The translations under genes were made by a program, and so were the position numbers. Positions 9,326 to 59,476 of a DNA stretch of 64,000 nt are shown piece after piece (the stretch's first letter is position 1; every line of letters starts with the position of its first letter). The stretch comes from Octopus sinensis (lineage: Eukaryota). Below the pieces are notes generated by a model. That model was not told the origin of the DNA, made no database searches, and saw nothing but the letters and a program-made list of their open reading frames with translations. The stretch spans positions 46,004,001-46,068,000 of the forward strand of contig NC_043000.1 in the NCBI RefSeq assembly GCF_006345805.1. The letters are read 5' to 3'.

Positions 9326-9347
9326 TATATATCTGTATGAATTTGTA

Positions 9348-9386
<39 letters not shown>

Positions 9387-9915: not shown

Positions 9916-9978
<63 letters not shown>

Positions 9979-10020
9979 ACTAGATATATAGATAGATAGA
10001 TTTGTGCATATAGATACATA
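9238..10020. repeat. Cluster of (TA)n/(TG)n microsatellites
   Basis: Directly visible at 9238-9390 and 9670-10020. Confidence 0.9.
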
Positions 10021-28822: not shown

Positions 28823-29245
28823 AGGTGGTGAGCTGGTAGAAACGTTAGCACGCCGGGTGAAAAGCTTAGCAGTATTTCGTCTGCCGCTACATTCTGATTT
28901 CAAATTCCACCAAGGTCGACTTTGCCTTTCATCCTTTCGGGGTCGATAAATTAAGTACCAGTTATGCATTGGAGTCGATGTAATCGACTTAATCCCTTTG
29001 TCTGTCCTTGTTTGTCCTCTCTGTGTTTAGCCCCTTGTGGGTAGTGAAGAAACAGGTATTTTGTCTGCTGCTACATTCTGAGTTCAAATTCTGCCAAGGT
29101 CGACTTTGCCTTTCATCCTTTCGGGGTCGATAAATTAAATTAAGTACCAATTACGCACTGAGGTCGATGTAATCAACTTAACCACTTTGTCTGTCCTTGT
29201 TTGTCCTCTCTATGTTTAGCCCCTTGTGGGCAATAAAAAATAAGA
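28823..29245 (+). mobile_element. SINE A dimer (full copy plus headless copy)
   Basis: Second unit begins at 'ggtattttgtctgc' (~29056), the same breakpoint as the dimer at 4094-4510. Confidence 0.85.
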
Positions 29246-35364: not shown

Positions 35365-35712
35365 TGTGGCCATTTCCAGCGCCACCCCGACTGGCCTCCA
35401 TGCTGGTGGCATGTAAAAAGCACCATACGATTGTGGCTGTTGCCAGCCTTGTCTGGCCCCTGTGCTGGTGGCACGTAAAAAGCACCATCCGATCATGGCC
35501 GTTTGCCAGCCTCGTCTGGCACCTGTGCAGGTGGCACGTAAAAAGCACCCACTACACTCACGGAGTGGTTGGCATTAGGAAGGGCATCCAGCTGTAGAAA
35601 CACTGCCAGATCAGACTGGGCCTGGTGCAGCCTACTGGCTCTCCAGACCCCAGTTGAACCCTCCATCACATGCTAGCATGGAAAACGGACGTTAAACGAT
35701 GATGATGATGAT
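35365..35712 (+). mobile_element. 5'-truncated RTE 3' UTR with (GAT)n tail
   Basis: Matches 55090-55414. Confidence 0.88.
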
Positions 35713-35714
35713 AC

Positions 35715-36125
35715 TAAAGCCTATTCCTCATTTTTTAGAAGTGGGTAGCCACAACAAGACACATTTCTCAGCTCAAAGAGATAAGCCTCGTTTTATGCTC
35801 GGGTCAAGGCATAGAACACAACCCCCAGTATCAGCATCAGGCCTGACATTATATGCTGGTTTACACCCACTGTATCATGCTGGTTGCCCCTTTGAGCAAC
35901 ATCAAATTCACTCGTCCATGAACACCCTCCAAGCTTTCCTATCATTTATAAACTCTCTTGCTTCTCTCACTCCAACACCCCTAACCACCAAAGTTATGCT
36001 GTCCATCCACACAAAACAAGGTCTGCCTCTGGTTCAGCTGTCTACCACTTCTGCCTTTATCATCCTTCTTACCATCCTCTCCTTATCCATCCTCTTCATG
36101 TGATCAAACCACATCAACATTCATC
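35715..36125 (-). mobile_element. 3' end of a second RTE-like LINE family
   Basis: Minus strand reads LMWFDHMKRMDKERMVRRM...TRGRPCFVWMD...DRKAWR, the typical RTE C-terminal WFGHV.RM...RGRP...W...DR..WR motif. Confidence 0.7.
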
Positions 36126-36639
36126 TATCCATTTTAGTTGTTAGGTTTTCTCTCATCCCTACTCGCCTTCGCACCTCCTCGTTCCTCACCCTATCCATCC
36201 ATGTCACACCAACCACAGCCCTCTGACATCTCATCTCAAACACATCTACTAGTTACCTCTTTTCCACTTCTCTCAACCCCAATGTCTCTGCACCATATAA
36301 CATTGTCAGCACAACCATACCCTCATACACACCTATTTTCACTTTCATACTCAACCTTTTTTCACAACTCCAAGTACCTTACTGAGGTAAAATACTCATC
36401 CATCTTTATATTCCAAGTTAAAATTCCGCTGTGAATGAAAATTGACTTTGCCATTCATCCACCACCCCAAAGTTGCTGGCCTTGTACCAAAATTTGAAAC
36501 CAATATGTAAAATTACAATAAAGTTATAGATAATTTACTAAGTCACCAAGCAATCTTTATTATACAGAAAATTAAATGAGACCTTTAGGTTCTCAAGAGA
36601 TTCCAAATATATTTATCTGATACTTCATATGTAAGCACG

Positions 36640-36800
36640 TATGTATGAGTTGTATGGCTGTGTGATAAAAAGCTTGCTTCTCAACCACATGGATCTAGGT
36701 TCAATCCCTCTGTGTGGTACATTAGGCAAGTATGTTCTATTATAGCCACAGGTTGACCAAAGCTTTGTGAGTGAATCTGGTAGACAGAAACTGAGAGAAG
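36640..36800 (+). mobile_element. SINE B 5' half
   Basis: Head plus 'gtgagtgaatctggtagacagaaactgagagaagcc'. Confidence 0.75.
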
Positions 36801-37200
36801 CCTGCCATACCCCCACACTCTCATCCCAACCCACACCCACCTTTATACCCCACCCTTGCATCTCCCACTCCTGCATCCCCCACCCTCGTATCTCTCACAC
36901 CCCAACATCACCACACACCACCACACACACACCACCACACAACACAGCACCACACCACAACACAACATACCACACATCACCACACCATCACACCACAACA
37001 AAACACACACCACACATCACCACACCACACACCACTACATCACACCACGCCACATCACACCACTCCACACACACTAGTACTGACCACCTTCCAACACCCG
37101 CACCATCATCCACACACCTACACATGCACATACCCCCACGTCAAGGTCACCAGCCCCTATCTACATGCAAACACATGCTCTCACATACACATGCACAAAC
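36800..37200. repeat. Degenerate (CCACA)-rich low-complexity tract
   Basis: Directly visible; source of the T/H-rich ORFs. Confidence 0.85.
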
Positions 37201-37249
37201 ACCTTCATTTTGGAATGACCACTACATTATTGTCTCCCCTTCTTCCTAG

Positions 37250-37460
37250 CTCTCCTGTCCGACCACCTCTGTTCAGCCATCACCATGATTGACTGATAGC
37301 CACTAAAGCTTCTTTCATTCTCTCTCTGTTTATCTTCTCGTCTTCCTTTCTGCTGAAGAGCGTAGGCTCAAAACATAAAAGATTTTCTCACCTTCCTGAG
37401 CATTAAACTAATACAACTGCTTATTGTTTACACACTTGTCTCCATTTTTTGTTTTTTTGC
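37250..37460 (+). mobile_element. Short repeat with hammerhead relic (Penelope pLTR-like); second copy at 59095-59290
   Basis: CTTT-CTGCTGA-A-GAGC-GTAG-GCTC-AAAA-CATA-AAAG at 37346-37381. Confidence 0.5.
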
Positions 37461-37464: not shown

Positions 37465-37673
37465 TCCAACTATATATATATATATATATAAATATATATA
37501 TAAATATATATATGTATGTATACACACACGCGCAAACATACACGTGTATACATGTATATATATATATTTATGCATGTGTATCCTTGTGGATGGGTTTATG
37601 ACTGAAACAAGTAAAAGAATATAAGAATAAAATAATATGCATGAATCTATATACATACATACATATATATACT

Positions 37674-37705
<32 letters not shown>

Positions 37706-37708
37706 CCT

Positions 37709-37758
<50 letters not shown>

Positions 37759-37789
37759 GTATATATATATGTGTATATATGTGTGTATC

Positions 37790-37855
<66 letters not shown>

Positions 37856-39030: not shown

Positions 39031-42000
39031 GAGAACATTAATCTAGACGGCTAAAGACGAATGTCCAGCACAGTTTCCTGGTGCATGGTACTGAGGTTTC
39101 TCAGAACCTAGCCATATATTTAACGTAGAACGAGGAGGTGGGGGCAGTAAGGACAATGAGCTCAATGAAAAGTAGTCTGTATAAAAGATATTGGATAAAC
39201 ATTTTTGATTTAAAGTGTCTGGTGAAAATATTGAAAAGGTTGGCTGAAAATGTTTCCTAAAAATGAGTGATGGAAATGATTCATGAACATGTTTGACGAA
39301 AATATTTCATGAAAATGTTTGATAAAAATGTTCGATGAAAATATCTGATGAAAATGTGTAATGAAAATGTATGATGAAAATGTTTGATGAAAATGTCTAA
39401 TGACAATGTTTAATAAAAATGTTTGATGAATATGTTTCATGGAAATGTTTGATGAAAATGTTTGATAAAAATGTCTGATGAAAATATCTGATGAAAATGT
39501 TTGATGAAAATATCGGATAAAAATGTTTGATGAATATGTCTGATAAAAATGTTTGATGAAGATATTTGATAAGTTTTATGAAAATGTTTGATGAAAATGT
39601 TTGATGAAAATGTCTGATGAAAATATCTGAAAATCCTTGATGAAAACGTTTGATGAAAATGTCTGATGAAGATGTCTGATGAAAATTTTTCATGAAGATA
39701 TCTGATGAAAATGTATGATGAAAATGTTTGATGAAAATGTCTAATGACGATGTTTAATAAAAATGTTTGATGAATATGTTTGATGGAAATGTTTGATGAA
39801 AATGTTCGATAAAAATGTCTGATGAAAATATCTGATGAATATGTCTGATAAAAATGTTTGATGAAGATATTTGATAAAAAATTTTATGAAAATGCTTGAT
39901 AAAAATGTTTGATGAAAATGTCTGATGAAAATATCTCAAGAAAATCCTTGATGAAAATGTTTGATGAAAATGTCTGATGAAGATGTCTGATGAAAATTTT
40001 TCATGAAGATATCTGATGAAAATGTCTGATGAAAATATCTGATCAAAATATTTGATAAACATGATTGATGAAAATGTTTTATAAAAATGTTTGATGAAAA
40101 TGTCTGAAGAAAATGACTGATGAAAATGTTTGATGAAAATGCCTGATGAAAATGTTTGAGAAAAATGTTTGATGAAAATCGTCGATTAAAATGTCTAATG
40201 AAAATGTCGGATAAAATGCCTGATGAAAAAGTTTGTTGAAAATGTTTAATGAAAATGTCAAATGAAAATGTTTGATGAAAATGTTGGATAAAAATGTTTG
40301 ATGAAAAGTTTGATGAAAATGTTTCATGAAAATGTCTGAAGAAATGTTTGATGAAAATGTTTCAAAAAAAATTTTCATCAGATGTATTCAACAAACATCA
40401 AAAATTGCAGCAAATATTTTCATCAGATATATTCATCAAATTTTCCTGAACCATGTTCATCAAACATTTTCATCAAAGATTTTCTTCAAACATTTTCATG
40501 AAACATGTTCATCAAACATTTTCATCGAACATTTTCATGAAACATTTTCATAAAACATTTTATCAAATATTTTCTTCAAATATTTTCATCAAACATTTCC
40601 ATTAGATATTTTCATCAAGCATTTTAACAAATATTTTCATCAAACATTTTCATCAGACATTTTCATCAAGTTCAAAAAAATGTTTGGTTAAAATGTTTGA
40701 TAAACTGTTTCATGAATATGTATTATGAAAATGATAGATGAAAATATCTGTTGAAAATGTTTCATGAAAGTGTTTGATGAAAATGTTTGATGAAATTATT
40801 TTATGAAAATGTTTGAAGATAATGTCTGATTAAAATGTTTGATGAAAATGTTTCATGAAAATGTTTAATAAAAATGTTTGATGAAAATATTTCATTGACA
40901 TATTTGACGAAAACGTTTGAAAAAATTTGTTTGAAGAAAATGTCTGATGAAAATGTTTGATGAAAAAGTTTGACGAAAATGTTTGATAAAAATGATGGAT
41001 GAGAATGTTCGATGAAAATGACTGATGAAAATGTTTGAAGATAAAACTTGATGAAATGTCTGATGAAAATGTTTCACAAAGTTTCATGAAAATGTTTGAT
41101 GTAAGGTCTAATGAAAATGTTAAATAAAGATGCTTGATAAACATGTCTGATGAAAATGTTTGATGAAGATGCTTGATGAAAATGTCCAATGACAGTGTTT
41201 AATAAAAATGTTTGATGAAAATGTCTGAAGAAAATGTCTGATGAAAATGTTTGATGAAAATGTCTGATGAAAATATCTGAGGAAAATGTTTGATGAAATG
41301 TTTGATAAAAATGTTTGACAAAAAGGTTTGATGAAAGTGTCAAAATATTCATCAGATGTATTCAAAAAACATCAAAAATTGCAGCAAATATTTTCATCAA
41401 ATATTTTCCTGAACAATTTTCATCACACATTTTCTTCAAACATTTTCGGGAAACATGTTCATCAAACGTTTTCATGAAACATTTTCATGAAACATTTTCT
41501 TCAAACATTTTCATGAAACATGTTCATCAAATATTTTCATCGAACATTTTCATGAAACATTTTTATGAAACATTTTCTTCAAATATTTTCATCAAGCATT
41601 TTCATTAGATAAAGCATTTTAACAAATATTTTCATCAAACATTTTCATCAGACATTTTCATCAAGTTCAAAAAAATGTTTGGTTACAATGTTTGATAAAC
41701 TGTTTCATGAATATGTATTATGAAAATGATAGATGAAAATATCTGCTGAAAATGTTTCATGAAAGTGTTTGATGAAAATGTTTGATGAAATTATTTTATG
41801 AAAATGTTTGAAGATAATGTCTGATGAAAATGTTTGATGAAAATGTTTCATGAAAATGTTTAATAAAAATGTTTGATGAAAATATTTCATTGACATATTT
41901 GACGAAAACATTTCAAAAAATTTGTTTGAAGAAAATGTCTGATGAAAATGTTTGATGAAAAAGTTTGACGAAAATGTTTGATAAAAATGACGGATGAGAA

Positions 42001-45000
42001 TGTTCGATGAACATGTCTGATGAAAATGTTTGAAGATAAAACTTGATGAAATGTTTCAAAAAGTTTCATGAAAATGTTTGATGTAAGGTCTAATGAAAAT
42101 GTTAAATAAAGATGCTTGATTAACATGTCTGATGAAAATGTTTGATGAAGATGCTTGATGAAAATGTCCAATGACAATGTTTAATAAAAATGTTTGATGA
42201 AAATGTTTGATGGAAATGTTTGATGAAAATGTTTGATAAAAATGTCTGATGAAAATGTTTGATGAAGATATTTGATAAAAAGTTTTATGAAAATGTTTGA
42301 TGAAAATGTCTGATGAAAATGTTTAATGAAAAAGTTTAATAAAAATGTATGATGAAATTGTCTAATGAAAATATCTGAAGAAAATGCTTGATGAAAATGC
42401 TTGATGAAAATGCCTGATGAAGATGTCTGATGAAAATCTTTCATGAAGATATCTGATGAAAATGTCTGATTAAAATATTTGATAAACATGTTTGATGAAA
42501 ATGTTTAATAAAAATGTTTGATGAAAATGTCTGAAGAAAATGTCTGATGAAAATGTTTGATGAAAATGTCTGACGAAAATGTTTGAGGAAAATGTTTGAT
42601 GAAATGTTTGATAAAAATGTTTGACAAAAAGGTTTGATGAAAGTGTCAAAATATTCATCAGATGTATTCAACAAACATGAAAAATGCAGCAAATATTTTC
42701 AACAAATATTTTCCTGAACAATTTTCATCAAACATTTTCTTCAAACATTTTCATGAAACATGTTCAAACATTTTCATCGAACATTTTCATGAAACATTTT
42801 ATCGAACATTTTCTTTAAACGTTTCATCAGACATTTTCATCAAATACATTATCAAATATCTTAATCAAACATTTTCATTACATATTTTCATCAAGCATTT
42901 TAACAAATATTTTCATGAAACATTTTCATGAAACATTTTCTTCAGATATTTTCATCAGACATTTTCATCAAGTTCAAACAAATGTTTGGTTAAAATGTTT
43001 GATAAGCTGTTTCATGAATATGTATTATGAAAATGATAGATGAAAATATCTGCTGAAAATGTTTCATGAAAGTGTTTGATGAAAATGTTTGATGAAATTA
43101 TTTTATGAAAATGTTTGAAGATAATGTCTGATGAAAATGTTTGATGAAAATGTTTCATGAAAATGTTTAATAAAAATGTTTGATGAAAATATTTCATTGA
43201 CATATTTGACGAAAACGTTTGAAAAAATTTGTCTGAAGAAAATGTCTGATGAAAATGTTTGATGAAAAAGTTTGACGAAAATGTTTGATAAAAATGACGG
43301 ATAAGAATGTTCGATGAAAATGTCTGATGAAAATGTTTAAAGATAAAACTTGATGAAATGTCTGATGAAAATGTTTCAAAAAGTTTCATGAAAATGATTG
43401 ATGTAAGGTCTAATGAAAATGTTAAATAAAGATGCTTGATAAACATGTCTGATGAAAATGTTTGATGAAAATGCTTGATGAAAATGTCCAATGACAATGT
43501 TTAATAAAAATGTTTGATGAAAATGTTTGATGGAAATGTTTGATGAAAATATTTGATAAAAATGTTTGACAAAAGGGTTTGATGAAAGTGTCAAAATATT
43601 CATCAGATGTATTCAAAAAACATCAAAAATTGCAGCAAATATTTTCATCAGATATTTTCCTGAACAATTTTCATCAAACATTTTCTTCAAACATTTTGAT
43701 GAAACATGTTCATCAAACATTTTCATCGAATATTTTCATGAAACATTTTATCAAACATTTTCTTCAAACGTTTTCATCAGACATTTTCATCAAATACATT
43801 ATCAAATATCTTAATCAAATATTTTCATTACATATTTTCATCAAGCATTTTAACAAATATTTTCATCAAACATTTTCTTCATATATTTTCATCAGACATT
43901 TTCATCAAGTTCAAAAAAATGTTTGGTTAAAATGTTTGATTAACTGTTACATGAAAATGTTTTAGGAAAATGTTAGATGAAAATATCTACTGAAAATGTT
44001 TGATGAAATTATTTTATGAAAATGTTTGATGAAAATGTTTGATGAAAATGTTTGATAAAAATATTTGATGAAAATATTTGAAGATAATGTCTGAAGAAAA
44101 TGTCTGATGAAAATGTTTGATGAAAAAGTTTGATGAAAATGTTTGATAAAAATGACGGATGAAAATGTCTGATGAAAATGTTTGAAGAAAAAACTTGATA
44201 AAATGTCTGAATGAAAATGTTTGAAAATGTTTCATGAAAATGTTTGATGTAAGGTCTAATGAAAATGTTAAATGAAGATGCTTGAAGAACATGTCTGATG
44301 AAAATGTTTGATGAAGATGCTTGATGAAAATGTCTAATGACAATGTTTAATAAAAATGTTTGATGAAAATGTTTGATGGAAACGTTTGATAAAAATGTTT
44401 GATAAAAATGTCTGATGAAGATATTTGATAATAGGTTTTATGAAAATGTTTGATGAGAATGTCTGATGAAAATATCTGAACAAAATGCTTGAGGAAAATG
44501 CTTGATGAAAATGCTGGATGAAGATGGCTGATAAAAATCTTTCATGAAGATATCTGATGAAAATGTCTGATTAAAATATTTGATAAACATGTTTGATGAA
44601 AATGTTTAATAAAAATATTTGATGAAAATGTCTGAAGAAAATGTCTGATGAAAATGTTTGATGAAATTGTCTCATGAAAATATTTGAGGAAAATGTTAGA
44701 TAAAAATGTTTGTTGAAAATGTTCGATGAAAATGTTTGATGAAAATGTTTTTTGAAAATGTTTCATGAAAATGTCTGATGGAAAAGCTTGATGAAAATGT
44801 TTGATGAAAATATTTGATTGAAATATTTTATAAAAATTTTTGATAAAAATGTCCGATGAAAATGTCTGATGAAAATGATTGATGAAAATGTCTGATAAAA
44901 ATGTTGGATAAAAATGTCTGATGAAAATGTTTTTTGAAAATGTTTTTTGAAAATGTTTTTTGAAAATGTTCGATGGAAAATGTTTGATGAAAATGTTTGA

Positions 45001-45389
45001 TGAAAATATTTTGAGGAATATTATGGAAATCTTGATGAAAATGTCTGATGAAAATATCTGATGAAAATGTATCATGAAAATGTTTGAAGAAGATGTCTAA
45101 AAAATGTTTGATTACAATGATTGATGAAAATGTTTGATGAAAATATAAAAATATCTTATGAAAATGTTTGATAGAAATGTTTGATGAAAATGTTTGATAA
45201 AAATTCTCTATAAAAATGTCCGATAAATATTGTCTGATGAAAATGTGTGATGAATATATTTGAAGAAAATGTTTGATGGAAAGGTTTGATCAAAATATCG
45301 GATGAAAATGCTTGATGAATAAGTCTCATGAAAATGATTGATGAAAATATTTGATTAAATGTTCCATTAAAATGTCTGATGACAATGTT

Positions 45390-48230
45390 TGATAAAAATT
45401 TCTAATGAAAATCTTACATGAAAGTGTTTGATGAACGTGTATGCTAAAAATGTTTGATGAAAATATCTGATGCAAATGTCTGAAAAAAATGTCTGATGAA
45501 AATGTTTGATGAAAATCTCTAACGAAAATGTCTGATAGAAATGTTGAATAAAAATGTCTGAGGAAAATATTTGTTGAAAATGTTCGATGGAAATATGTGA
45601 TGAAAATGTATGATGAAAATGTTTGATGGAAATGTTTGATGAAAATGTCTGATGGAAAAGCTTCATGAAATTATTTGGTGAAAATATTGGATGGAAATAT
45701 TTTATGAAAACTTTTGATAAAAATGACGAATGAAAATGTCTGATGAAAATGTTTGATGAAAATGTCTGATGAAAATGTTTGATGAAAAAGCTTGATAAAA
45801 TGTTTCATAAAAATGTTTCACTAAAAGGCTTGATGAAAGTGTCAAAATTTTCATCAATATATACAATAAACATCATAAATTGATGCAAATATTTTCATAA
45901 GATATATATTCATCAAATATTTTCCTGAAATATTTTCATCAAACATTTTAATCAAACATTTTCTTCAAACATTTTCACCAAACATGTTCAGACATTTTCA
46001 TCGAACATTTTCATGAAACATTTTCATGAATCATTTTATCAGATATTTTCTCCAAAAAGTTTCATCAGACATTTTCATCAAACATTTTATCAAATATTTT
46101 CATCAAACACTTTCATCAGACATTTTCATCCGGCATTTTTTCAAATATTTTCATCAAACATTTTCATCAAACATTTTCTTCAGATATTTTCATCTGACAT
46201 TTTCATCAAATTCAACAAAATGTTTGGATAAAATGTTTGATAAATTGATTCATGAAAATGTTTTATGAAAATGTTCGATGAAAATATCTATTGAAATTGT
46301 TTCATGAAAATGCTTGATGAAAATGTTAAATGAAGATGCTTGTAGAACACGTCTGGGGAAAATGTTTGATGATGATGCTTGATGAAAATGTCTGATGAAA
46401 ATGTTTGGAGAAAATGTTCGATGAAAATATCTGACGAAAATATTTGATGAAATTGTCTGATGAAAATCTTAGTCGAAAATGTTTTATGAACATGTATGGT
46501 GAAAATGTTTGATTAAAATGTGTGATGAAAATGTCAGAAGAAAATGTTTAATGAAAATATTGATGAAAATGTTTGATGAAAATGTGTAATGAAAATCTTA
46601 CATGAAAATGTTTGATGAAAATGTATGATATTAATGTCTGTTCAAAATGTTTAATGAACATGTTTCATAAAAATGTTTGATGAAAATATCCAACGAAATT
46701 GTTTCACGAAAGTGTTTGGTGAAAATGTTTGATGAAAAAAATATTTTACGAAAATGTTTGATGAAAATGTTTGATGGAAATGTTTGATGAAAATGTTTGA
46801 TGAAAATGTTTGATGAAAATGTCTGATGAAAATGTTTGATAAAAATTTCTAATGAAAATCTTACATGAAAATGTTTGATGAAAATGTATGATGAAAATGT
46901 TTGATGAAAATATCTGATGCAAATGTCTGAAAAAAATGTCTGATGAAAATGTTTGATGAAAATCTCTAACGAAAATGTCTGATAGAAATGTTGAATAAAA
47001 TGTCTGAGGAAAATATTTGTTGAAAATGTTCGATGGAAATATGTGATGAAAATGTATGATGAAAATGTTTGATGAAAATGTTTGATGAAAATGTCTGATG
47101 GAAAAGCTTCATGAAATTATTTGGTGAAAATATTGGATGGAAATATTTTATGAAAACTTTTGATAAAAATGACGAATGAAAATGTCTGATGAAAATGTTT
47201 GATGAAAATGTCTGATGAAAATGTTTGATGAAAAAGCTTGATAAAATGTTTCATAAAAATGTTTCACTAAAAGGCTTGATGAAAGTGTCAAAATTTTCAT
47301 CAAATATATACAATAAACATCATAAATTGATGCAAATATTTTCATAAGATATATATTCATCAAATATTTTCCTGAAATATTTTCATCAAACATTTTAATC
47401 AAACATTTTCTTCAAACATTTTCACCAAACATGTTCAGACATTTTCATCGAACATTTTCATGAAACATTTTCATGAATCATTTTATCAGATATTTTCTCC
47501 AAAAAGTTTCATCAGACATTTTCATCAAACATTTTATCAAATATTTTCATCAAACACTTTCATCAGACATTTTCATCCGGCATTTTTTCAAATATTTTCA
47601 TCAAACATTTTCATCAAACATTTTCATCAAACATTTTCTTCAGATATTTTCATCTGACATTTTCATCAAATTCAACAAAATGTTTGGATAAAATGTTTGA
47701 TAAATTGTTTCATGAAAATGTTTTATGAAAATGTTCGATGAAAATATCTATTGAAATTGTTTCATGAAAATGCTTGATGAAAATGTTAAATGAAGATGCT
47801 TGTAGAACACGTCTGGGGAAAATGTTTGATGATGATGCTTGATGAAAATGTCTGATGAAAATGTTTGGAGAAAATGTTCGATGAAAATATCTGACGAAAA
47901 TATTTGATGAAATTGTCTGATGAAAATCTTAGTCGAAAATGTTTTATGAACATGTATGGTGAAAATGTTTGATTAAAATGTGTGATGAAAATGTCAGAAG
48001 AAAATGTTTAATGAAAATATTGATGAAAATGTTGATGAAAATGTGTAATGAAAATCTTACATGAAAATGTTTGATGAAAATGTATGATATTAATGTCTGT
48101 TCAAAATGTTTAATGAACATGTTTCATAAAAATGTTTGATGAAAATATCCAACGAAATTGTTTCACGAAAGTGTTTGGTGAAAATGTTTGATGAAAAAAA
48201 TATTTTACGAAAATGTTTGATGAAAATGTC
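45390..48230. repeat. Near-identical tandem duplication, period ~1447 bp
   Basis: Junctions at 45843/47290; near-identical ORFs at 46013/47460 and 46026/47473; motif at 45394/46841. Confidence 0.9.
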
Positions 48231-51200
48231 TGATGAAAATATTTGATGAAAATGTTTGAATAAAATGTCTGATGAAGTTGTTTGAAGAAAATGTTTGATG
48301 AAAATGATTGATGAATATTTTATGAAAATACTTGCTGCAATTTTTGATGTTTTTTAAATTTATATTATGGAAATCTTGATGAAAATGTCTGATAAAAATA
48401 TCTGAAGATGTTTCATGAAAATGTTTGATGAAAATGTTTCATGAAAATGTTTGAAGAAAATGTTTCATGGAAATGTTTGAAGAAGATGTCTGCGGAAAAT
48501 GTTTGATGACAATGATTGATGAAAATGTTTGATGGAAATTTTAAAATATTTCATGAAAATATATGATAGAAATGCTTGATGAAATTGTTTGATAAAAATT
48601 CTGTTAAAAATGTCTGATAAATATAGTCTGATGATAATGACTGATGAAAATGTGTGATGAATATATTTGAGGAAAATGTTTGTTGAAAAGGTTTGATGAA
48701 AATGTCGGATGAAAATGCATGATGGATAAGTCTCATGAAAATGTTTGATGAAAATAATTGATTAAATGTTTCATTAAAACGTCTGATGACAATGTTTGAT
48801 AAAAATTTCTAATGAAAATATTACAAGAAAATGTTTGATGAACGTGTATGATGAAAATGTTTGATGAAAATGTGTGATGCAAATGTCTGAAGAAAATTTC
48901 TGATTAAAATGTTTGATGAAAATGTTTGATGAAAATGTCTTGTGAAAAAGTCTCCTGAAAATGTATGAGGAAAATGTCTGATGAAAATGTTTGATAAAAA
49001 TGTTTGATGAAAATGATTGATTAAAATGTTTGAATAACATGTTTCATGAAAATGCTTGATGAAAATGTCCGATGAAAATGTCTGATGAAAATGTTTGATG
49101 TATATGTCTGATCAAAATGTTTGATGAAAATGTTTGAAGAAAATATTGGAGGAAAATGTCTGATAAAAATGTTTGATGAAAATGCTTGAGGAATATGTCT
49201 GATGAAAATATTTTATGAAAATGTCATGAAAATGTTTCATGAAAATGTTTGATGGAAAAGTTTGAGGAAAATGTTTGATGAAAATGTTCGATGAACGTGT
49301 ATGATGAAAACGTTTGATGGAAATGTCTGATGCAAATGTTTGGTAAAAATGTTTGATGAAAATTTTTGATGAAAATATCTGATGAAAATGTCTGATGAAA
49401 ATGTTTGATGAAAATATATATTGAAAACTTTCACGAAAGTGTTTCATGAAAATGTTTCATGTAAATGTTTTATGAAAATGTTTGATGAAAAGGTTTGATG
49501 AAAATGTCTGATTAAAATGTTTGATGAAAGTATTTGAAGAAAATATCTGATGAAAATGTTTGATGAAAATGTTTCATCAAAATGTCTGATGACAATGTTT
49601 ATTAAATATATTTGATGAAAATATTTGATGGAAATGTTTGAGGAAATTGTTCGACAAAAATTGTCTGATGAAAATGTCTGATGAATAAGTTTGATAAAAA
49701 TGTTTGATGAAAATGTCTGATGAAAATGTCTGATGAAAATGTTTGATGAAAATGTCTGATGAAATTTTTGATGAAAATATTTGAAAATATTTCATGATAA
49801 TATTGGAAATGATTGATTAAAATGCTTGAAAAACATGTCTGATGATGAAGCTTGTTGAAAGTGTTTTATGAAAATATTTCATGAAAATTTCTGGTGAAAA
49901 TCTAAGATGAAAATGTTTGATGAACATGTACGAGGAAAGTGTTTGATAAAAATATCTGATGAAAATGTCAGAAAATGCTTGATGAAAATGTTTGATGGGA
50001 ATCTGTAATGAAAATCTGAGATGAAAATGTAGGATGAAAATGTCTGATGAGAATATTTCATGAAAGTGTTTCATGAAAATGATTTATAAAAAAGATATAT
50101 GAAAATGTTTGAGGAAAATGTTTGATGAAAATGTCTCATAACATTGTTTAATAAAAAATATTTGATGAATATGTTTGATGGAAATGTTTGATGAAAATGT
50201 CTCATAAAAATCGTCTGATGAAAATGATTGATGAAAATGTTTGTTGAATATGTATAAAGAAAGTGTTTCATAAAAATGTTTGATGAAAATGTCAGATGAA
50301 AATGTTTGATGGAAATGTCTGATTAAACTGTTTGATGAAAATGTTTGACAAAATGTTTAATGAAAATTTATGAAAATGTTTGACTTAAATGTTCAAGAAA
50401 AATGTTTGATGAAAATGATTGAGGAATCTGTCTGATGAAAATGATCCCTGAACGTGTATGGTGAAATTTTTTTGATAAAAACGTCAGATGAAAATGTCTG
50501 ATGGAAATGTTTGATGAAAATGTTTTATGAAAATGTTTGTTGAAAATGTTTGATGAAAATGTTTAATGAAAATGTTGGAGGAATATATTTGATGAATATA
50601 TTTGTAAAAAATATTTACTGATATTTTTGATGTTTGTTGAATATATTTCATGAAAGTTTTGATGAAAATGTTTGATGAAAGCATTTTAATAAAATATGTT
50701 AAACAGACATTTTCACCAAACATTTTCATCAAACATTTTATCAAACATATTCATCACACATTTTCATCAGAGATTTTCATAAAACATTTTCATCAAATAT
50801 TTTATCAAACGTATTCATCAGACATGTTTATCAAATATTTTCACCAGACATTTTCATCAGACGTTTTCATCAAACAATTTCATCAGACATTTTCATCAAA
50901 CATTTTCATTAGACATTTTCATCAGACATTTTATCAAACATATTCATCAGACATTTTTATCAGACATATTCATCAAGCATTTTCATCACACGTTCATCAA
51001 ACATTTTCATCCAAGATTCAGACATTTTCAACAAACATTTTCATAAAAAATTTTCATGAAAGATTTACAAATTTTTTATTCAAATATTTTAGTCAGAAAT
51101 TATCAAACAATTTAAATCAAAGAATTTCATCAAACATGTTCATCAGACATTTTCATCAAACATTTTCATCAGACATTTTCATCAAACAATTTCATCAGAC

Positions 51201-51929
51201 GTTTTCATCAGATGTTTTCATCAGATAATTTATCAAACATTCACCAGACGTTTTCATCAGATATTTTCATCAAACATTTTCATCAGACATTTTCATCATC
51301 AATTTCATTAGACATTTTCATCAAACATTTTCATCAAACAATTTCATCAGACATTTTCATCAAACATTTTCATCAAACAATTTCAACAAACATTTTCATC
51401 AAACATTTTCATCAAATATTTTGTTCAAACAATTTCATCGCACATTTTCATGAGACATTTTCATCAGACATTTTCTTCAGACGTTTATATCAAACATTTT
51501 CTTCCGACATTTTCATCAAACATTTTCATGACACACGTTCATCAAACATTTTCATCTAAGATTCTCATCAGACATTTTCAACAAACATTTTCATGAAACA
51601 TTTTCATCAAACATTTTCAACGAACATTTTCATCAAATAAATTCAACATACATCAAAATTTTCGGCAAATGTTTTCATCGAATATATTCATCAAATATTT
51701 TTGTGAAGCATTTTCAATTTCATCAGACAATTTCGCTAGACATTTTCCTCAAACATTTTCACCAGACATTTTCATCAGAAATTTCCATTAGACATTTTCA
51801 TCACACATTTTATTAAACATTTCCATCAGACATTATCATCAAGCATTTTAATCAAACATGTTAATCAGGTATTTTCATCAGACATTTTCATCAGACACTT
51901 TAATCAAACATTTTCATCAAACATTTTCA

Positions 51930-53340
51930 ACAAACATTTTCATCAGACATTTTCATCAAACATTTTCATCAGACATTTTAATCAAACATTTTCATCAAAC
52001 ATTTACATCAGAAATTTTCATCATACATTTTCTTCAGACATTTGCCTAAAACATTTTCATTAAACATTTTCATCACACACGTTCATCAAACATTTTCATC
52101 CAAGATTCTTATCAGACATTTACACCAGACATTTTCAACAAACATTTTCCTGAAACATTTTCATGAAAGATTTTCATCAAATATTTTATTCAAACATTTT
52201 AATCAGACATCATCAAACAATTTCATCAAACATTTTCATCAGACATTTTCATCAAAAATCAAACACCAAACATTTTCATCACACACGTTCATCAAACATT
52301 TTCATCCAAGATTCTCAGCAGACATTTACATGAGACATGTTCCACAAACATTTTCATGAAACATTTTCATGAAAGATTTTCATCAAATATTTTATTCAAA
52401 CATTTTAATCAGACATCATCAAACAATTTAATCAAACAATTTCATCAGACATTTTCATCAAACATTTTCATGAAACAATTTCATCAGACATTTTCATCAA
52501 ACATTTTCAACAAACATTTTCATCAGACATTTTCATCAGACATTTTTTTCAAACAATTTCTTCAGACATATTCATCAAACATTTTCATCACACATTTTAT
52601 TAAACATTTCCATCAGACATTATCATCAAGCATTTTAATCAAACATGTTAATCAGGTATTTTCATCAGACACTTTAATCAAACATTTTCATCAAACATTT
52701 TCAACAAACATTTTCATCAGACATTTTCATCAAACATTTTCATCATACATGTTAATCAGATATTTTCATCAAACATTTACATCAGAAATTTTCATCATAC
52801 ATTTTCTTCAGACATTTGCCTAAAACATTTTCATTAAACATTTTCATCACACACGTTCATCAAACATTTTCATCCAAGATTCTTATCAGACATTTACACC
52901 AGACATTTTCAACAAACATTTTCCTGAAACATTTTCATGAAAGATTTTCATCAAATATTTTATTCAAACATTTTAATCAGACATCATCAAACAATTTCAT
53001 CAAACATTTTCATCAGACATTTTCATCAAAAATCAAACACCAAACATTTTCATCACACACGTTCATCAAACATTTTCATCCAAGATTCTCAGCAGACATT
53101 TACATGAGACATGTTCCACAAACATTTTCATGAAACATTTTCATGAAAGATTTTCATCAAATATTTTATTCAAACATTTTAATCAGACATCATCAAACAA
53201 TTTAATCAAACAATTTCATCAGACATTTTCATCAAACATTTTCATGAAACAATTTCATCAGACATTTTCATCAAACATTTTCAACAAACAATTTCATCGG
53301 ACATTTTCATCAGACATTTTTTCAAACAATTTCTTCAGAC
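51930..53340. repeat. Near-identical tandem duplication, period 774 bp
   Basis: Identical 105-aa pseudo-ORFs at 52042 and 52816; matching starts at 52356 and 53130. Confidence 0.9.
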
Positions 53341-54575
53341 ATATTCATCAAACATTTTCATCACACATTTTCATCAGACATTTTATCAAACTTATTCATC
53401 AGATATTTTCAAACATTTTCATCAAACATTTTCATCAAACAATTTCATCAGACATTTTCATCAGACATTTTCATCAGACATTTTCATCAGACATTTTCAT
53501 CAAACATTTTCATTAGTCATTTTCATCAGACATTTTATCAAACATATCATACATTTTCATCAGACATTTTCCTCAAACATTTTCATCAGACATTTTCATC
53601 AGACATTTTCATCAAACAATTTCATCAGACATTTTCATAAAACATTTTCATCTCACACGTTCATCAAACATTTTCATCCAAGATTCAGACATTTTCAACA
53701 AACATTTTCATAAAACATTCTCATGAAAGATTTTAATTAAATATTTTTTTCAAACATGTTAATGAGACATTTTCATCAAATATTATCAGCAAACATTTTC
53801 ATTAGACATTTTCATCAAACATTTTCATCAAATTTTTTCATGAGACATTTTCATTAAACATTTTCATCAGACATTTTCACCATACGTTTCCATCAAACAT
53901 TTTCATCAAACATTTTAATCAAACATTTTCAACGAATATTTTCATTAAATAAATTCAACATACATCAAACTTTTGGGCAAAAGTTTTCATCGAATATATT
54001 CATCAAATATTTTCGTGAAAACTTTTCATTTTCATCAGACAATTTCACTAGATATTCTCCTCAATATTTACATCAAACATTTTCTTCATACATTTTCATC
54101 AGACATTTTCATCAGAAATTTTCATTAGGCGTTTTCCTAAAACATTTTATCAAACATTTTCATCAGACATTTTCATCAAACATTTTATAATTCATATTCA
54201 TCAGACATTTTCATCAAACATTTTCATCAGACATTTTCATCAAACATTTTATAATTCATATTCATCAGACATTTTCATGAAACATTTTCATCAGACATTT
54301 CATAAAATAATTTCATCATACACGTTCATCAAACATTTTCATCTAAGATTTTCATCAGACATTTCCATCAGACATATTTATCATGCATTTTCATCAAACA
54401 TGTTCATCAAAAGTTTCATGAAATATATTCAACAAACATCTAAAATTGCAGCAAAATTTTCAACAGATATATTTCATCAAATATTTTCCTGAAACATTTC
54501 CATCAAACATTTTCATCAGACAATTTAATCAGACATTTTCATCAAACATTTTTAATAATCATTTTCATCAAACAT

Positions 54576-55388
54576 TTGCGCTGGTATGGTCATGTGGCGA
54601 GAATGGATGAAGATAGTTGTGTGAAAAAGTGCCACACCCTAGCGGTTGAGGGAACCTGTGGAAGAGGCAGACCCAGGAAAACCTGGGACGAGGTGGTGAA
54701 GCACGACCTTCGAACTTTAGGTCTCACTGAGGAAATGACTAGAGACCGAGACCTCTGGAAGTGTGCTGTGCGCGAGAAGACCCGGCAGGACAAGTGAGTC
54801 CATAACCCGTGGCCTTCTACATGGGATGGAGCCAGCCTACGTATGCATACCTTCCCTTCTTGGGACACAAAACTCTACTTGTGAAGACGTGTTGAGGCAA
54901 GTGAGGATCAGAATCGAAATCGATCAATGGAAATTGCGGATGTGCTACCAGTGCCGGTGGCATGTCGAAACTCTACTTGTGAAGACCCGTTGAGGCAAGT
55001 GAGGATCAGAATCGAAATCGATCAATGGAAATCGATCAATGGAAATTGCAGATGTGTTACCAGCGCAGGTGGTATGTAAGAGAACTTTCCGTTTCGCGAC
55101 CGTTGCCAGCACCGCCCCGTTTCGTGTCCGTTGACAGCCTCGCCTGGCCCTCGTGCCGGTGGCACATAAAAAGCACCATCCGTTCGTGGCCGTTTGCCAG
55201 CTCTGTCTGGCACCAGTGCGGGTGGCACGTAAAAAGCACCCACTACACTCACGGAGTGGTTGGCGTTAGGAAGGGCATCCAGCCGTAGAAACACTGCCAG
55301 ATTTGACTGGGCCTAATGAAGCCTTCTGGCTTCACAGACCCCAGTAGAACCGTCGAACCCATGCTAGCATGGAAAACGGACGCTAAAC

Positions 55389-55414
<26 letters not shown>
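54576..55414 (+). mobile_element. Young 5'-truncated RTE LINE inserted in the satellite
   Basis: LRWYGHVARMDEDSCVKKCHTLAVEGTCGRGRPRKTWDEVV...DRDLWKCAV* then 3' UTR and (GAT)n tail; flanked by ATTTTCATCAAAC on both sides. Confidence 0.93.
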
Positions 55415-55419
<5 letters not shown>

Positions 55420-57296
55420 ATCAAACTTTTTCATCAGACATTTTCATCTGACGTTTTCATAAAACATTTTCAACGAATATATTCAACAAATATATTCATC
55501 AAATATATTCAACATACAGAAAAATTTCAGCAGAAGTTTTCATCGAATATATTCATCAAGTATTTTCCAGAAATATTTTCATTTTCATCAAACATTTTCA
55601 TCATTTTCATATTTTATCAAACATACTCATCAGAGATTTTCATCAAAACTTTTCATCAAGCAATTTCATCAGACATTTTCATCAAACATTTTCCTCAAAC
55701 ATTTTCATCAATTATTTTCATCAAACATATTCATCAAATATTTTCATCTATCATTTTAATCAAACAGTTTCCTCAAACATTTTCATCAAACATTTACATA
55801 AAACATTTTCATCAAACATTTACTTAAAACATTTTCATCAAACATTTTCATGAGATTTTTTATCAAACATTTTCATCAGACATTTTCAAATATTCAAAAA
55901 TGTTTGATGAAAATATTTCATTAAAATATTTGATGATGTTTTATGAAAATGTCTGATGAAAATGTCTGATGAGTATGTTTGATAAAATGTTTGTTGAAAA
56001 TGTTTGATGAAAATGTCTGATGAAAATGTTTGATGAAAATATTTGATGAAAATATCTGATAAAATGTCTGATGAAAATGGTTGATGAAAATGTTTCAGGA
56101 AAATATTTGATGAATATATTAAAAATATTTGCTGCAATTTTTGTTGTTTGTTGAATATATTCCATGAAAATGTTTATGAAAATGTTTTATGTAAATGTTT
56201 GATGAAAATGTTTGATGAAAATGTTTGATGCAAATGTTTGATGAATACGTTTGATAAAATATTTGATGAAGATGTTTTATGAAAATGTCTGATGAAAATG
56301 TCTGATGAAATTGTTTGATGAAAATATCTGATGAAAATGTTTGATGAAAATGTTTGATGAATATATTTGATGAAAATGTCTGATGAAAATGTCTGATGAG
56401 TATGTTTGATAAAATGTTTGATGAAAATGTTTGAGGAAAATAACTAGTGAAAATGTCTGATTAAAATGAAAATGTTTCAGGAAAATATTTGATGAAAACT
56501 TTTGCTGAAATTTTTGATGTATGTTGAATATATTTCATGAAAATGTTCGTTGAAAATGTTTGATGTAAATGTTTGATGAAAATGTTTGATGAAAATGTCT
56601 TTTGAATGTGTTTGTTGAAAATGTTTGATGAAAATTTCTTATGAAAATGTTTGATAAAATTGTTTGATGAAGATGTTTGGTGAAAATGTTTGACGAAAAT
56701 GTTTGAATATATTTGATGTAAATGTTTGATGAAAATGTCTGATGAAAATGTGTGATGAGTATGTTTGATAAAATGTTTGATGAAAATGTTTGATGATAAT
56801 GTCTGATGAAAATGTCTGATGAAAATGTTTGAGGAAAATATCTAGTGAAAATGTCTGATTAAAATGAAAATGTTTCAGGAAAATATTTGATGAATATATT
56901 CGATGAAAACTTTTGCTGAAATATTTGATGTTTGTTGAATATATTTGATGAAAATGTTCGTTGAAAATGTTTGATGAAAATGTCTGATGAAAATGTCTGT
57001 TGAATGTGTTTGTTGAAAATGTTTGATGAAAATTTTTGATGAAAATGTTTGATAAAATTGTTTGATGAAGATGTTTGATGAAAATGTTTGATGAAAATGT
57101 TTCAGGAAAATATTTGGTGAATATTTTTGATGAAAACTTTTTTTTGAAATTTTTGATGTTTGTTGAATATATGTGACTAAAATTTTCGATGAAAATGTCT
57201 GATGACTATGTTTGATGAAAATGTTTGATGAATATATCGAATGATAACTTTTCGTTAATATGTCTGTTGAATATTTTTGATGAAAATATCTGCCAT

Positions 57297-57480
57297 CCTC
57301 GGAGCTTTCCAGTAAATCTCATTCACGGAATTTTCCCGGTGATTTTATCCTCGGAATTTGTAAGAATGTCTCAACCTCGGAAGTTTCCAGGATATCTCCC
57401 TTCCACGTAACTTTCAAGTATGTTCTCGGAATTTTCCAGGATGTCCCAACCACGGAACTTTCCAGTAAGTCTCTCAGCTA
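57297..57480. repeat. Degenerate ~25-bp minisatellite (CCTCGGAACTTTCCAG core)
   Basis: About seven CC(T/A)CGGA-anchored units abutting the satellite end. Confidence 0.7.
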
Positions 57481-58560: not shown

Positions 58561-58581
58561 CGAATATATATATATATATAT

Positions 58582-58612
<31 letters not shown>

Positions 58613-58619
58613 ATATTAT

Positions 58620-58661
<42 letters not shown>

Positions 58662-58662
58662 A

Positions 58663-58718
<56 letters not shown>
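58560..58718. repeat. (TA)n microsatellite
   Basis: Directly visible. Confidence 0.95.
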
Positions 58719-58719
<1 letters not shown>

Positions 58720-59062
58720 TGGCTCCTGTCCTGGTGGGATATAAAAAGCACCATCTGAACGTGGTTGATGCCAGTGTCTCTTGACTGGATCCCATGCTGG
58801 TGATACGTAAAAGGCACTATTTGAACGTAATCAATGTCAGGACCGCCTGACTAGCTCCTGTACCAGTGGCACGTGAAAAGCACCCACTACACTCTCAGAG
58901 TAGTTAGCGTTAGGAAGGGAATCCAGCTGTAGAAACATTGCCAGATCAGTTTGGAGCCTGGTGCAGCTGCTGGCTCTCCAGACCTCGGTCAAACCATCCA
59001 ACCCAAGCCAGCATAGAAAACAGACATTAAACGATGATGAGGATGTTGCTGCTGATGATGAT
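58718..59062 (+). mobile_element. 5'-truncated RTE 3' UTR
   Basis: 'aaaagcacccactacactc...attaaacgatgatga'. Confidence 0.85.
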
Positions 59063-59284: not shown

Positions 59285-59338
<54 letters not shown>

Positions 59339-59350
59339 ATATATAGATAT

Positions 59351-59405
<55 letters not shown>

Positions 59406-59420
59406 GATATAAATATAGAT
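59285..59420. repeat. (TA)n/(GATA)n microsatellite
   Basis: Directly visible. Confidence 0.95.
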
Positions 59421-59476
59421 TGTGTGTATTTGTGTATGTATATATGTGTGTGTGTATATATATATATAAATACTGA

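What the first reader, a model, noticed from the sequence alone, without database searches (positions are those of the whole stretch)
39190..57290. 18-kb 13-bp satellite that flips strand 14 times
Seen: blocks of (TGATGAAAATGTT)n alternate with blocks of its reverse complement. Short reverse blocks (~310-385 bp) sit between 0.6-3 kb forward blocks up to ~50.7 kb, followed by a ~5-kb reverse block and a final forward block. Established: satellites are usually head-to-tail over long distances. Inference: neighbouring blocks can fold back, giving cruciforms in DNA or hundreds of bp of dsRNA if transcribed, which could feed ADAR editing or siRNA/piRNA silencing. I do not recognise this satellite as described.
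Basis: partly seen in the sequence, partly recalled or inferred. Interest (0 to 1): 0.8.

Follow-up and report, generated by a model that had tools for sequence, protein, structure and literature searches.

The report
Octopus 13-bp satellite with amplified inversion
An 18-kb array of a 13-bp repeat in what is probably an octopus genome really does change strand 14 times, but twelve of those changes are copies of one small inverted piece that was multiplied along with its neighbours, so this is ordinary satellite-DNA turnover of a kind already described in beetles and humans.

Summary
(TGATGAAAATGTT)n occupies about 39,190-57,296, roughly 1,320 monomer equivalents at 85-89% identity to consensus.

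The 14 changes are not 14 events. The six short reverse blocks (310-387 bp) share both breakpoints and the non-consensus sequence around them. They sit inside 0.95-1.45-kb higher-order units that are 83-99.8% identical to each other. So one roughly 320-bp inverted segment of the array was co-amplified six times. The other two changes bound one roughly 5.2-kb reverse block. That block carries its own 774-bp duplication and a later 836-bp retroposon insertion.

No junction is a palindrome: arms match at 0.62-0.81, against a background of 0.77. Fold-back read chimeras are therefore unlikely.

A forward block plus its neighbouring reverse block is predicted to fold into an imperfect hairpin of about 290 bp. 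Nothing here tests transcription, ADAR editing or small RNAs.

I found the monomer described nowhere. The architecture is known: orientation switches with conserved inversion sites occur in Tribolium "macro-dyad" satellites, human HSat3/beta-satellite and mouse satellites.

Verdict: a real feature, a new member of a known kind, of modest interest.

The parts
39190..57296 (.). Whole 13-bp satellite array (TGATGAAAATGTT)n, about 1,320 monomer equivalents. The first ~100 bp are degenerate edge monomers.
   Evidence: TRF; strand vote; wrap-around alignment to the consensus; sequence read
39292..40365 (+). Forward block F0
40366..40675 (-). Short reverse block R1. Its left junction has a 7-nt deletion relative to R2-R6.
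41341..41670 (-). Short reverse block R2, with the same two breakpoints as R1 and R3-R6
42647..42977 (-). Short reverse block R3
43592..43914 (-). Short reverse block R4
45843..46215 (-). Short reverse block R5
47289..47675 (-). Short reverse block R6, 99.8% identical to R5 including flanks
45369..48305 (+). Two copies of a 1,447-bp higher-order unit (45369-46846 and 46816-48305; 97.7% over 1,492 bp), each containing one reverse block
   Evidence: self-blastn; ungapped chunk identity 0.99-1.00; autocorrelation peak 0.66 at lag 1447
40456..44126 (+). Four copies of an older 0.95-1.3-kb higher-order unit carrying R1-R4. Pairs: 40456-41274 with 41471-42256, 93%; 40646-41263 with 42948-43565, 96.9%; 42511-43189 with 43455-44126, 89%.
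47676..50682 (+). Forward block F6. It contains, in forward orientation at 48323-48352, the marker motif found inverted at the left end of each short reverse block.
50683..54577 (-). Large reverse block, part a. It has an internal 774-bp higher-order duplication: 51792-52743 matches 52579-53513 at 95% overall, and about 100% over 51.99-52.4 against 52.77-53.2 kb.
54578..55413 (+). Retroposon inserted into the large reverse block. It consists of a 5'-truncated LINE ORF end (RWYGHVARM...GRGRPRKTW...*), a SINE-like 3' tail and a (GAT)n tail.
   Evidence: sequence; translation; at least 7 other copies of the tail in the window; 85% identity to a 'Hypothetical predicted protein [Octopus vulgaris]'
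55414..55889 (-). Large reverse block, part b
55890..57296 (+). Final forward block F7, with an internal period of about 398 bp. It carries the marker motif in forward orientation at 56120-56149.
57294..57475 (+). A different tandem repeat, about 24-26 bp (CCTCGGAATTTTCCAGGATATCT-like, ~7 copies), directly abutting the array. It is unique in the window, and whether it is related to the satellite is unknown.

Best explanation
This is a real, old and poorly homogenised interstitial 13-bp satellite array in an octopod genome. Its many strand changes come from at least two rearrangements followed by local amplification.

Step 1 (shown): a roughly 320-bp piece of the array itself became inverted. 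In reverse complement it carries a non-consensus marker segment that also exists in forward orientation at 48.3 kb and 56.1 kb. Homology stops at a sharp breakpoint, TTTTGA|CACTTT.

Step 2 (shown): the inverted piece and its forward neighbours became a 0.95-1.45-kb higher-order unit. That unit was duplicated in tandem in several rounds: first an early split between R1-R4 and R5/R6 (83-86% identical), then R1-R4 (87-95%), and most recently R5/R6 (99.8%). That accounts for 12 of the 14 switches.

Step 3 (shown): a separate roughly 5.2-kb reverse block, about 50683-55889, supplies the other two switches. It later gained its own 774-bp duplication and a retroposon insertion.

Inferred: the duplications arose by unequal crossing-over or replication slippage. 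The inversions arose by break and rejoin or by template switching. The arrangement is a neutral by-product of satellite turnover, not a selected device. If the locus is transcribed through, imperfect A/U-rich hairpin RNA would form. Nothing here shows that it is transcribed.
For: Same consensus in all 16 blocks. All six short blocks share both junctions. The 38-nt R>F junction string occurs only at those six sites, with 0 expected by chance. The F>R-side 30-mer is at five of the six junctions at up to 3 mismatches (R3's diverged copy falls outside that limit), and additionally on the minus strand at 48323 and 56120. Alignment A1 covers the six units and their pairwise identities are 83-99.8%. 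Alignment A2 shows the reverse complement of the blocks' left ends homologous to 48.3 kb and 56.1 kb up to the breakpoint.

Long direct duplications reach 97.7% over 1,492 bp, 96.9% over 618 bp, and 95% over 953 bp, while neighbouring monomers match at only 72-75%. In 156-bp chunks, direct best matches reach 1.00, whereas inverted best matches have a median of 0.78 and a maximum of 0.91. No junction is palindromic: 0.62-0.81 against a control of 0.77 +/- 0.03.

The TE insertion and 11-15% divergence from consensus fit an old, decaying array. Diverged human alpha-satellite likewise accumulates mutations, inversions and TE insertions. Octopod origin: the retroposon ORF end is 85% identical to an Octopus vulgaris protein, and a SINE motif I recalled from octopus genomes matches 3 times against 0 expected.
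Against: Only one locus in one assembly could be examined, and no reads were available, so assembly errors cannot be ruled out. The near-identical R5/R6 unit in particular could be an over- or under-collapsed copy number. Whether the first event was an in-place inversion or the insertion of an inverted duplicate cannot be decided. Whole-block similarity of the reverse blocks to any candidate source segment is barely above background. Neutrality is an inference from lack of evidence. In Tribolium, the authors take conserved inversion sites as a hint of function.
Confidence: 0.8

Rival explanations
1. Assembly artefact: the orientation switches are chimeric joins, or fold-back (missed-adapter) reads, in a region that is hard to assemble.
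For: Satellite arrays are prone to misassembly. The R5/R6 units are 99.8% identical, so the copy number there is uncertain. No reads were available to check.
Against: Fold-back chimeras give near-perfect palindromes centred on the switch. Here the arms match at 0.62-0.81, the same as random F-versus-R pairs at 0.77 +/- 0.03. The same two breakpoints recur six times with 5-17% divergence between non-twin copies and with monomer-sized indels, and an assembler cannot invent that. A retroposon with a normal tail sits inside the large reverse block.
Confidence: 0.07
2. Functional hairpin-RNA locus. The array is transcribed across F and R blocks, and the resulting dsRNA is a substrate for ADAR hyper-editing or is diced into endo-siRNAs.
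For: Predicted hairpin of about 290 bp for F0+R1: -242.6 kcal/mol against -126.7 +/- 6.4 for shuffles. Perfect complementary runs are 22-36 bp between neighbouring blocks and up to 49 bp across the array. The host is probably an octopus, and from general knowledge that lineage has very active A-to-I editing.
Against: There is no evidence of a promoter, a gene or transcription. No Rfam family matches, and there is no convincing coding ORF in the window. The arms are only about 70-80% complementary and are not kept similar to each other: inverted matches never exceed background, whereas direct duplicates reach 100%. So nothing suggests selection for pairing. Any inverted satellite would give the same folding result.
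Confidence: 0.06
3. A structural macro-dyad module of the Tribolium kind. Orientation switches with conserved inversion sites would be a genome-wide, possibly (peri)centromeric, feature of this satellite, spread for example through eccDNA, and this locus would be one instance.
For: The inversion sites are conserved and have no foreign sequence at the junction, as described for TfSat01 and TmSat1/2. The F6 and large-R pair forms a dyad of roughly 3.0 and 4.4 kb.
Against: The array is small (18 kb) and flanked by ordinary TE-rich unique DNA on both sides. The short arms are very asymmetric, 0.3 kb against 0.6-3 kb. Monomers are poorly homogenised at 72-75%, unlike centromeric major satellites. 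All the conserved junction copies are explained by local tandem duplication.
Confidence: 0.06
4. Fourteen independent flips produced by a recurrent site-specific or hotspot mechanism acting on the monomer.
For: The reverse blocks have similar sizes (310-387 bp).
Against: The flanks of the reverse blocks are co-duplicated over 0.6-1.5 kb at 89-98% identity. The junction-adjacent sequence shares private substitutions and indels in a nested pattern: R5=R6, R3~R4, and R1-R4 against R5/R6. That is the signature of descent by copying, not of recurrence.
Confidence: 0.01

Closest known systems
Tribolium satellite arrays with inversely oriented subarrays, 'macro-dyad symmetries': TfSat01/TfSat03 (PMC12581902) and TmSat1/TmSat2 (PMC13081366)
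   Same: An uninterrupted satellite array changes monomer orientation. The inversion sites fall into a few conserved types. A truncated monomer abuts a reverse-oriented truncated monomer with no foreign sequence between them. Hairpin or cruciform potential is predicted but untested.
   Different: The Tribolium arrays use 110-170-bp-class monomers in multi-megabase (peri)centromeric regions. They mostly have two roughly symmetric subarrays, and their junction types are shared across chromosomes. This locus has a 13-bp monomer in a single 18-kb interstitial array with strongly asymmetric arms, and all junction copies are explained by local tandem duplication. The Tribolium authors state that such symmetries had been documented only in Tribolium.
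Human HSat3B5 (chr9), beta-satellite and diverged alpha-satellite arrays with many inversion breakpoints (Altemose et al., 10.1101/2021.07.12.452052)
   Same: Strand switches occur inside satellite arrays. [quoted passage not shown] This array likewise has 11-15% divergence from consensus, inversions and a retroposon insertion.
   Different: Monomer family, scale (megabases against 18 kb), chromosomal context and host all differ.
Complex satellite monomers built from inverted subunits: Tribolium brevicornis 1,061-bp satellite, T. madens MAD2 and T. audax TAUD2 (cited in PMC12581902)
   Same: The amplified repeating unit itself contains oppositely oriented parts. Here that is a 0.95-1.45-kb unit made of about 320 bp reverse plus 0.6-1.1 kb forward.
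   Different: Those units are homogenised and make up major satellites with thousands of copies. Here there are only six copies, of variable length.
Hairpin-RNA (hpRNA) endo-siRNA loci of Drosophila, recalled from general knowledge and not tested here
   Same: Inverted repeat arms could form long intramolecular dsRNA if transcribed.
   Different: hpRNA arms are kept highly complementary and the loci are demonstrably transcribed and diced. Here the arms are at background similarity and no expression data exist.

Membership tests
Satellite / tandem-repeat DNA | Head-to-tail repetition of one monomer over kilobases | tested here: met
   Period 13, with 889, 303, 36 and 104 copies in four TRF rows. 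Same consensus in all blocks.
Satellite / tandem-repeat DNA | High genomic abundance, multiple arrays, heterochromatic location | not testable with these tools
   No octopod genome is in the searchable DNA collections. There were 0 hits in metagenome, prokaryote-genome and viral contigs. The only hit is one 1.1-kb Tara Oceans contig with about 21 related monomers.
Higher-order repeat (HOR) organisation | Multi-monomer units more similar to each other than neighbouring monomers are | tested here: met
   Units are 89-97.7% identical over 0.6-1.5 kb, against 72-75% between adjacent monomers. Autocorrelation peaks fall at lags 774, 1307 and 1447.
Satellite arrays with orientation switches and conserved inversion sites (Tribolium macro-dyad type) | Oppositely oriented subarrays within one uninterrupted array | tested here: met
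Satellite arrays with orientation switches and conserved inversion sites (Tribolium macro-dyad type) | Few conserved inversion-site types, with no extraneous sequence at the switch | tested here: met
   Two junction types, each present six times, plus two unique junctions. Satellite sequence of opposite orientations abuts directly.
Satellite arrays with orientation switches and conserved inversion sites (Tribolium macro-dyad type) | Tendency to symmetric arms (dyad symmetry) | tested here: not met
   Short blocks of 0.31-0.39 kb lie next to forward blocks of 0.6-3.0 kb. Only F6 (3.0 kb) and the large reverse block (4.4 kb of satellite) are roughly balanced.
Satellite arrays with orientation switches and conserved inversion sites (Tribolium macro-dyad type) | Same inversion sites on many arrays and chromosomes; (peri)centromeric location | not testable with these tools
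   Only this window is available.
Hairpin-RNA / dsRNA-producing inverted-repeat locus | Arms with long, well-maintained complementarity | tested here: inconclusive
   The predicted hairpin is strong. But the arms are only 62-81% complementary, no better than random F/R pairs, and perfect runs are 22-36 bp.
Hairpin-RNA / dsRNA-producing inverted-repeat locus | Transcription through both arms; small RNAs or A-to-I edited reads | not testable with these tools
   No expression data. No Rfam match.
Fold-back read or assembly chimera | Near-perfect palindrome centred on the switch point | tested here: not met
   All 14 junctions score 0.62-0.81, against a control of 0.77 +/- 0.03.

The most novel reading that the evidence does not exclude
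Orientation-switching satellite arrays with propagated, conserved inversion junctions may not be peculiar to Tribolium. They may also be a regular feature of cephalopod genomes. In the octopus, with its very active ADAR system, such arrays would be transcribed into long imperfect hairpins that are hyper-edited or diced.
Probability: 0.06. Interest if true: 0.6.

Novelty: new member of a known kind. Interest (0 to 1): 0.28.

Why it matters
The locus is a clean small-scale example of how a satellite array comes to look as if it flips constantly. One inversion captured inside a higher-order unit is multiplied by tandem duplication, so counting strand switches greatly overstates the number of rearrangements. 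It also records an apparently undescribed 13-bp satellite in an octopod, a group for which I found no satellite catalogue. It extends the "conserved inversion site" pattern beyond beetles, but at a single locus only. If the locus proved to be transcribed, it would be a ready-made imperfect dsRNA source in an animal known for RNA editing. That remains untested.

Tried and rejected
1. Literature search for the monomer in six rotations. It returned only chance matches in primers and similar sequences, and no satellite.
2. Searches for cephalopod or octopus satellite catalogues found nothing relevant.
3. Rfam scan of the whole window: 0 matches.
4. Exact searches for 2- and 3-monomer patterns in metagenome contigs (two scans), prokaryote genome contigs and viral contigs: 0 hits. 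Genome-wide distribution therefore could not be assessed.
5. Protein search with the stop-free satellite ORF, used as a proxy for finding other arrays. It gave only two short ENA marine-metagenome ORFs. One of them, contig L001, carries about 21 monomers of the same family, but its flanks do not match the window.
6. Coding reading of the (NIFIKHFHQTFSS)n ORFs: rejected. The C-containing strand has no TA or TG dinucleotide in the consensus, so it cannot contain stop codons. The ORFs are broken by every indel and have no Pfam match.
7. TE-borne origin (terminal inverted repeats or LTRs bounding the array): the flanks share only dispersed SINE copies.
8. Identifying the source segment of the inverted block by whole-block alignment. 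F7 scores highest for R1-R3 but only marginally above the 95th percentile. Only the roughly 100-bp marker region is convincingly homologous.
9. A gapped blastn chunk scan with word size 11 timed out and was replaced by an ungapped scan.
I did not submit the pseudo-proteins prepared, so the absence of exons near the array is not established.
Full report
OBSERVATION

Tandem Repeats Finder reports four period-13 arrays: 39232-50680 (889 copies), 50682-54577 (303), 55414-55888 (36) and 55897-57232 (104). Their consensus units lie on opposite strands, and adjacent copies match at 72-75%. The forward consensus TGATGAAAATGTT contains no C, so GC skew in 1-kb windows swings from about +0.2 to +0.7 down to -0.6 as orientation changes.

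An 8-mer and then a 6-mer strand vote resolve the array as F, R1, F, R2, F, R3, F, R4, F, R5, F, R6, F, a large R and a final F. That is 14 switches. Wrap-around alignment to the consensus shows that all 16 blocks belong to one family: the consensus is identical, the match is 85-89%, and there are about 1,320 monomer equivalents. Dimers of the monomer are absent from the rest of the window.

WHAT THE SWITCHES ARE

Self-comparison shows long direct duplications that are far more similar than neighbouring monomers:
- 45369-46846 matches 46816-48305 at 97.7% over 1,492 bp.
- 40646-41263 matches 42948-43565 at 96.9%.
- 40456-41274 matches 41471-42256 at 93%.
- 42511-43189 matches 43455-44126 at 89%.
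- 51792-52743 matches 52579-53513 at 95%.

Each of the first four pairs carries one short reverse block at the same relative position.

Printing the junctions and aligning the six units (alignment A1) shows that all six short blocks share both junctions, together with non-consensus sequence:
- On the left: ...GATGAAAGTGT|CAAAATATTCATCAGATGTATTCAA..AAATTGCAGCAAATATTTTCATCA...
- On the right: ...CATTTTCATCAAGTTC|AAAAAAATGTTTGGTTAAAATG...

The 38-nt right-junction string occurs only at these six places, with 0 expected. Pairwise identities are nested. R5/R6 are 99.8% identical, R3/R4 94.9%, R1-R4 87-91%, and the R1-R4 group against R5/R6 83-86%. Sequence-defined blocks are 310-387 bp. Successive left breakpoints are 975, 1306, 945, 2251 and 1446 bp apart.

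Twelve of the fourteen switches are therefore copies of two breakpoints. One inverted segment was carried inside a higher-order unit that was duplicated in several rounds.

ORIGIN OF THE INVERTED SEGMENT

The 30-mer next to the left junction also occurs on the minus strand at 48323 and 56120, which means in native orientation inside forward blocks F6 and F7. Alignment A2 shows that the reverse complement of the left ~100 bp of the reverse blocks is homologous to those two forward segments. This includes the odd motif AAAATATTTGCTGCAATTTTTGATGTTT. Homology ends abruptly at TTTTGA|CACTTT.

The reverse blocks are thus inverted satellite from this array family, not foreign DNA, and the breakpoint is sharp. 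Whole-block alignment to any single source segment is only marginally above background. I therefore cannot distinguish an in-place inversion from the insertion of an inverted duplicate.

THE LARGE REVERSE BLOCK

The remaining two junctions, at about 50682/50683 and about 55889/55890, bound about 5.2 kb. This block has its own 774-bp duplication, about 100% identical over 400 bp.

It is interrupted at 54578-55413 by an 836-bp insertion in three parts:
- The end of a LINE ORF, RWYGHVARM...GRGRPRKTW...*.
- A SINE-like tail with at least seven other copies in the window.
- A (GAT)n tail.

The ORF fragment is 85% identical to a "Hypothetical predicted protein [Octopus vulgaris]". A SINE motif I recalled from octopus genomes matches three times against 0 expected. 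On that basis the host is most likely an octopod.

There is a weak, old inverted similarity (0.86-0.91) between 51.5-52.0 kb and 56.6-57.0 kb. I leave it unexplained.

ARTEFACT TEST

Fold-back chimeras would give near-perfect palindromes at the switch. For 200-bp arms, the left arm in reverse complement matches the right arm at 0.62-0.81 across the 14 junctions. Random F-versus-R pairs give 0.77 +/- 0.03. Across the array, direct best matches reach 1.00, while inverted best matches have a median of 0.78 and a maximum of 0.91.

Six copies of the same breakpoints, most pairs of which have diverged and which carry monomer-sized indels, cannot be produced by an assembler. Copy number of the nearly identical R5/R6 unit could still be wrong. 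No reads were available.

FOLD-BACK POTENTIAL

F0 plus R1 (644 nt) folds in silico into one imperfect hairpin of about 290 bp. Its free energy is -242.6 kcal/mol against -126.7 +/- 6.4 for shuffles, z = -18. Neighbouring arms share perfect complementary runs of 22-36 bp, and the longest such run in the array is 49 bp.

This shows potential only, because any inverted satellite would behave the same way. From general knowledge, arms at 70-80% complementarity are poor candidates for cruciform extrusion in DNA. Imperfect dsRNA is possible if the locus is transcribed. I found no Rfam match, no convincing gene in ORFs of 90 aa or more, and I have no way to test transcription.

The long ORFs on the C-containing strand, (NIFIKHFHQTFSS)n up to 192 aa, arise because that strand's consensus has no TA or TG dinucleotide. 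They are not evidence of coding.

COMPARISON WITH WHAT IS KNOWN

I found no description of the monomer, and no other array in the searchable DNA collections. The one exception is a 1.1-kb Tara Oceans contig with about 21 monomers of the same family at 77-81% identity.

The architecture, however, is known:
- Human HSat3B5 and beta-satellite arrays contain over 200 inversion breakpoints, and diverged alpha-satellite accumulates mutations, inversions and TE insertions.
[quoted passage not shown] Their inversion-site types are few and highly conserved, with no intervening sequence at the switch. The authors call these macro-dyad symmetries.
- Several Tribolium satellites have complex monomers built from inverted subunits.

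This locus shares the orientation switches, the conserved junction types and the direct abutment. It differs in monomer size (13 bp), in scale (18 kb, interstitial, flanked by TE-rich unique DNA), in its strong arm asymmetry and in its poor homogenisation. All of its junction copies are explained by local tandem duplication.

VERDICT

The mechanism is at least two rearrangements plus higher-order amplification in an old, decaying satellite array, most likely neutral (confidence about 0.8). The dsRNA/ADAR/siRNA idea is not excluded, but nothing beyond generic folding supports it. This is a new member of a known kind, of modest interest.

Noticed in passing
window 54578-55413: An 836-bp retroposon is inserted in the large reverse block. 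It has the end of a 5'-truncated LINE ORF (85% identical to an Octopus vulgaris hypothetical protein), an internal ~98-bp duplication, a SINE-like tail and a (GAT)n tail. The tail family has at least 7 other copies in the window, for example 35433-35712, 22624-22886 and 58866-59057.
   Followed up: partly
window 39397-55827, both strands (e.g. 50650-51228 +, 44542-45075 -): ORFs of 90-192 aa encoding (NIFIKHFHQTFSS)n run along the C-containing strand of the satellite. This happens because that strand's consensus has no TA or TG dinucleotide and so cannot contain stop codons. Two metagenome 'proteins' (P0001, P0002) appear to be ORFs of the same kind; P0001's contig does carry the repeat, P0002's DNA was not examined.
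   Followed up: yes
L001 563-858 and 320-390 (ENA ERZ908221, Tara Oceans marine metagenome contig, 1,106 bp): Short arrays (~21 and ~5 copies) of the same 13-bp family (CATTTTCATCAAA / TTCATCAAGCATT) are 77-81% identical to the window's array. The contig ends repeat each other (GGAGAGCGTGCGCTATGGGTAAGTGA...), so it may itself be a ~1.07-kb repeat unit. The source organism is unknown.
   Followed up: partly
window 57294-57475: A distinct tandem repeat of about 24-26 bp (CCTCGGAATTTTCCAGGATATCT-like, ~7 copies, 60-81% matches) directly abuts the right end of the satellite. It is unique in the window.
   Followed up: partly
window 48323-48352 and 56120-56149 (minus-strand matches): The marker motif AAAATAyTTGCTGCAATTTTTGwTGTTT occurs in forward orientation inside forward blocks F6 and F7. 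F7 also has an internal period of about 398 bp (56329-56704 matches 56727-57102 at 88%). This hints at an older ~400-bp higher-order unit from which the inverted piece derives.
   Followed up: partly
window 51525-51970 against 56616-57004: Weak colinear inverted similarity (0.86-0.91, the highest inverted match in the array) links the large reverse block and the final forward block. It may be the remnant of an old inverted duplication.
   Followed up: no
window 36000-37250: A C-rich, CA/CCA-type low-complexity tract (period 5/15 CACAC/CACCAC, GC skew about -0.5) lies 2 kb upstream of the array. It produces a spurious 160-aa Pro/Thr/His-rich ORF at 36767-37249.
   Followed up: no
window 4094-4458, 28872-29230, 35401-35549, 18067-18269; motif hits at 27785, 60650, 61074: SINE-like elements are frequent, and some are locally duplicated in tandem (184-bp, 189-bp, 63-bp and 73-bp periods). 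The motif GACTGCGGCCATGCTGGAGCACCGCC, recalled from octopus repeats, matches three times.
   Followed up: partly
window 2353-2796, 9238-10040, 37648-37853, 58564-58719, 59285-59472: Unusually long AT/TA dinucleotide microsatellites (up to 223 copies) and other microsatellites are scattered through the window.
   Followed up: no
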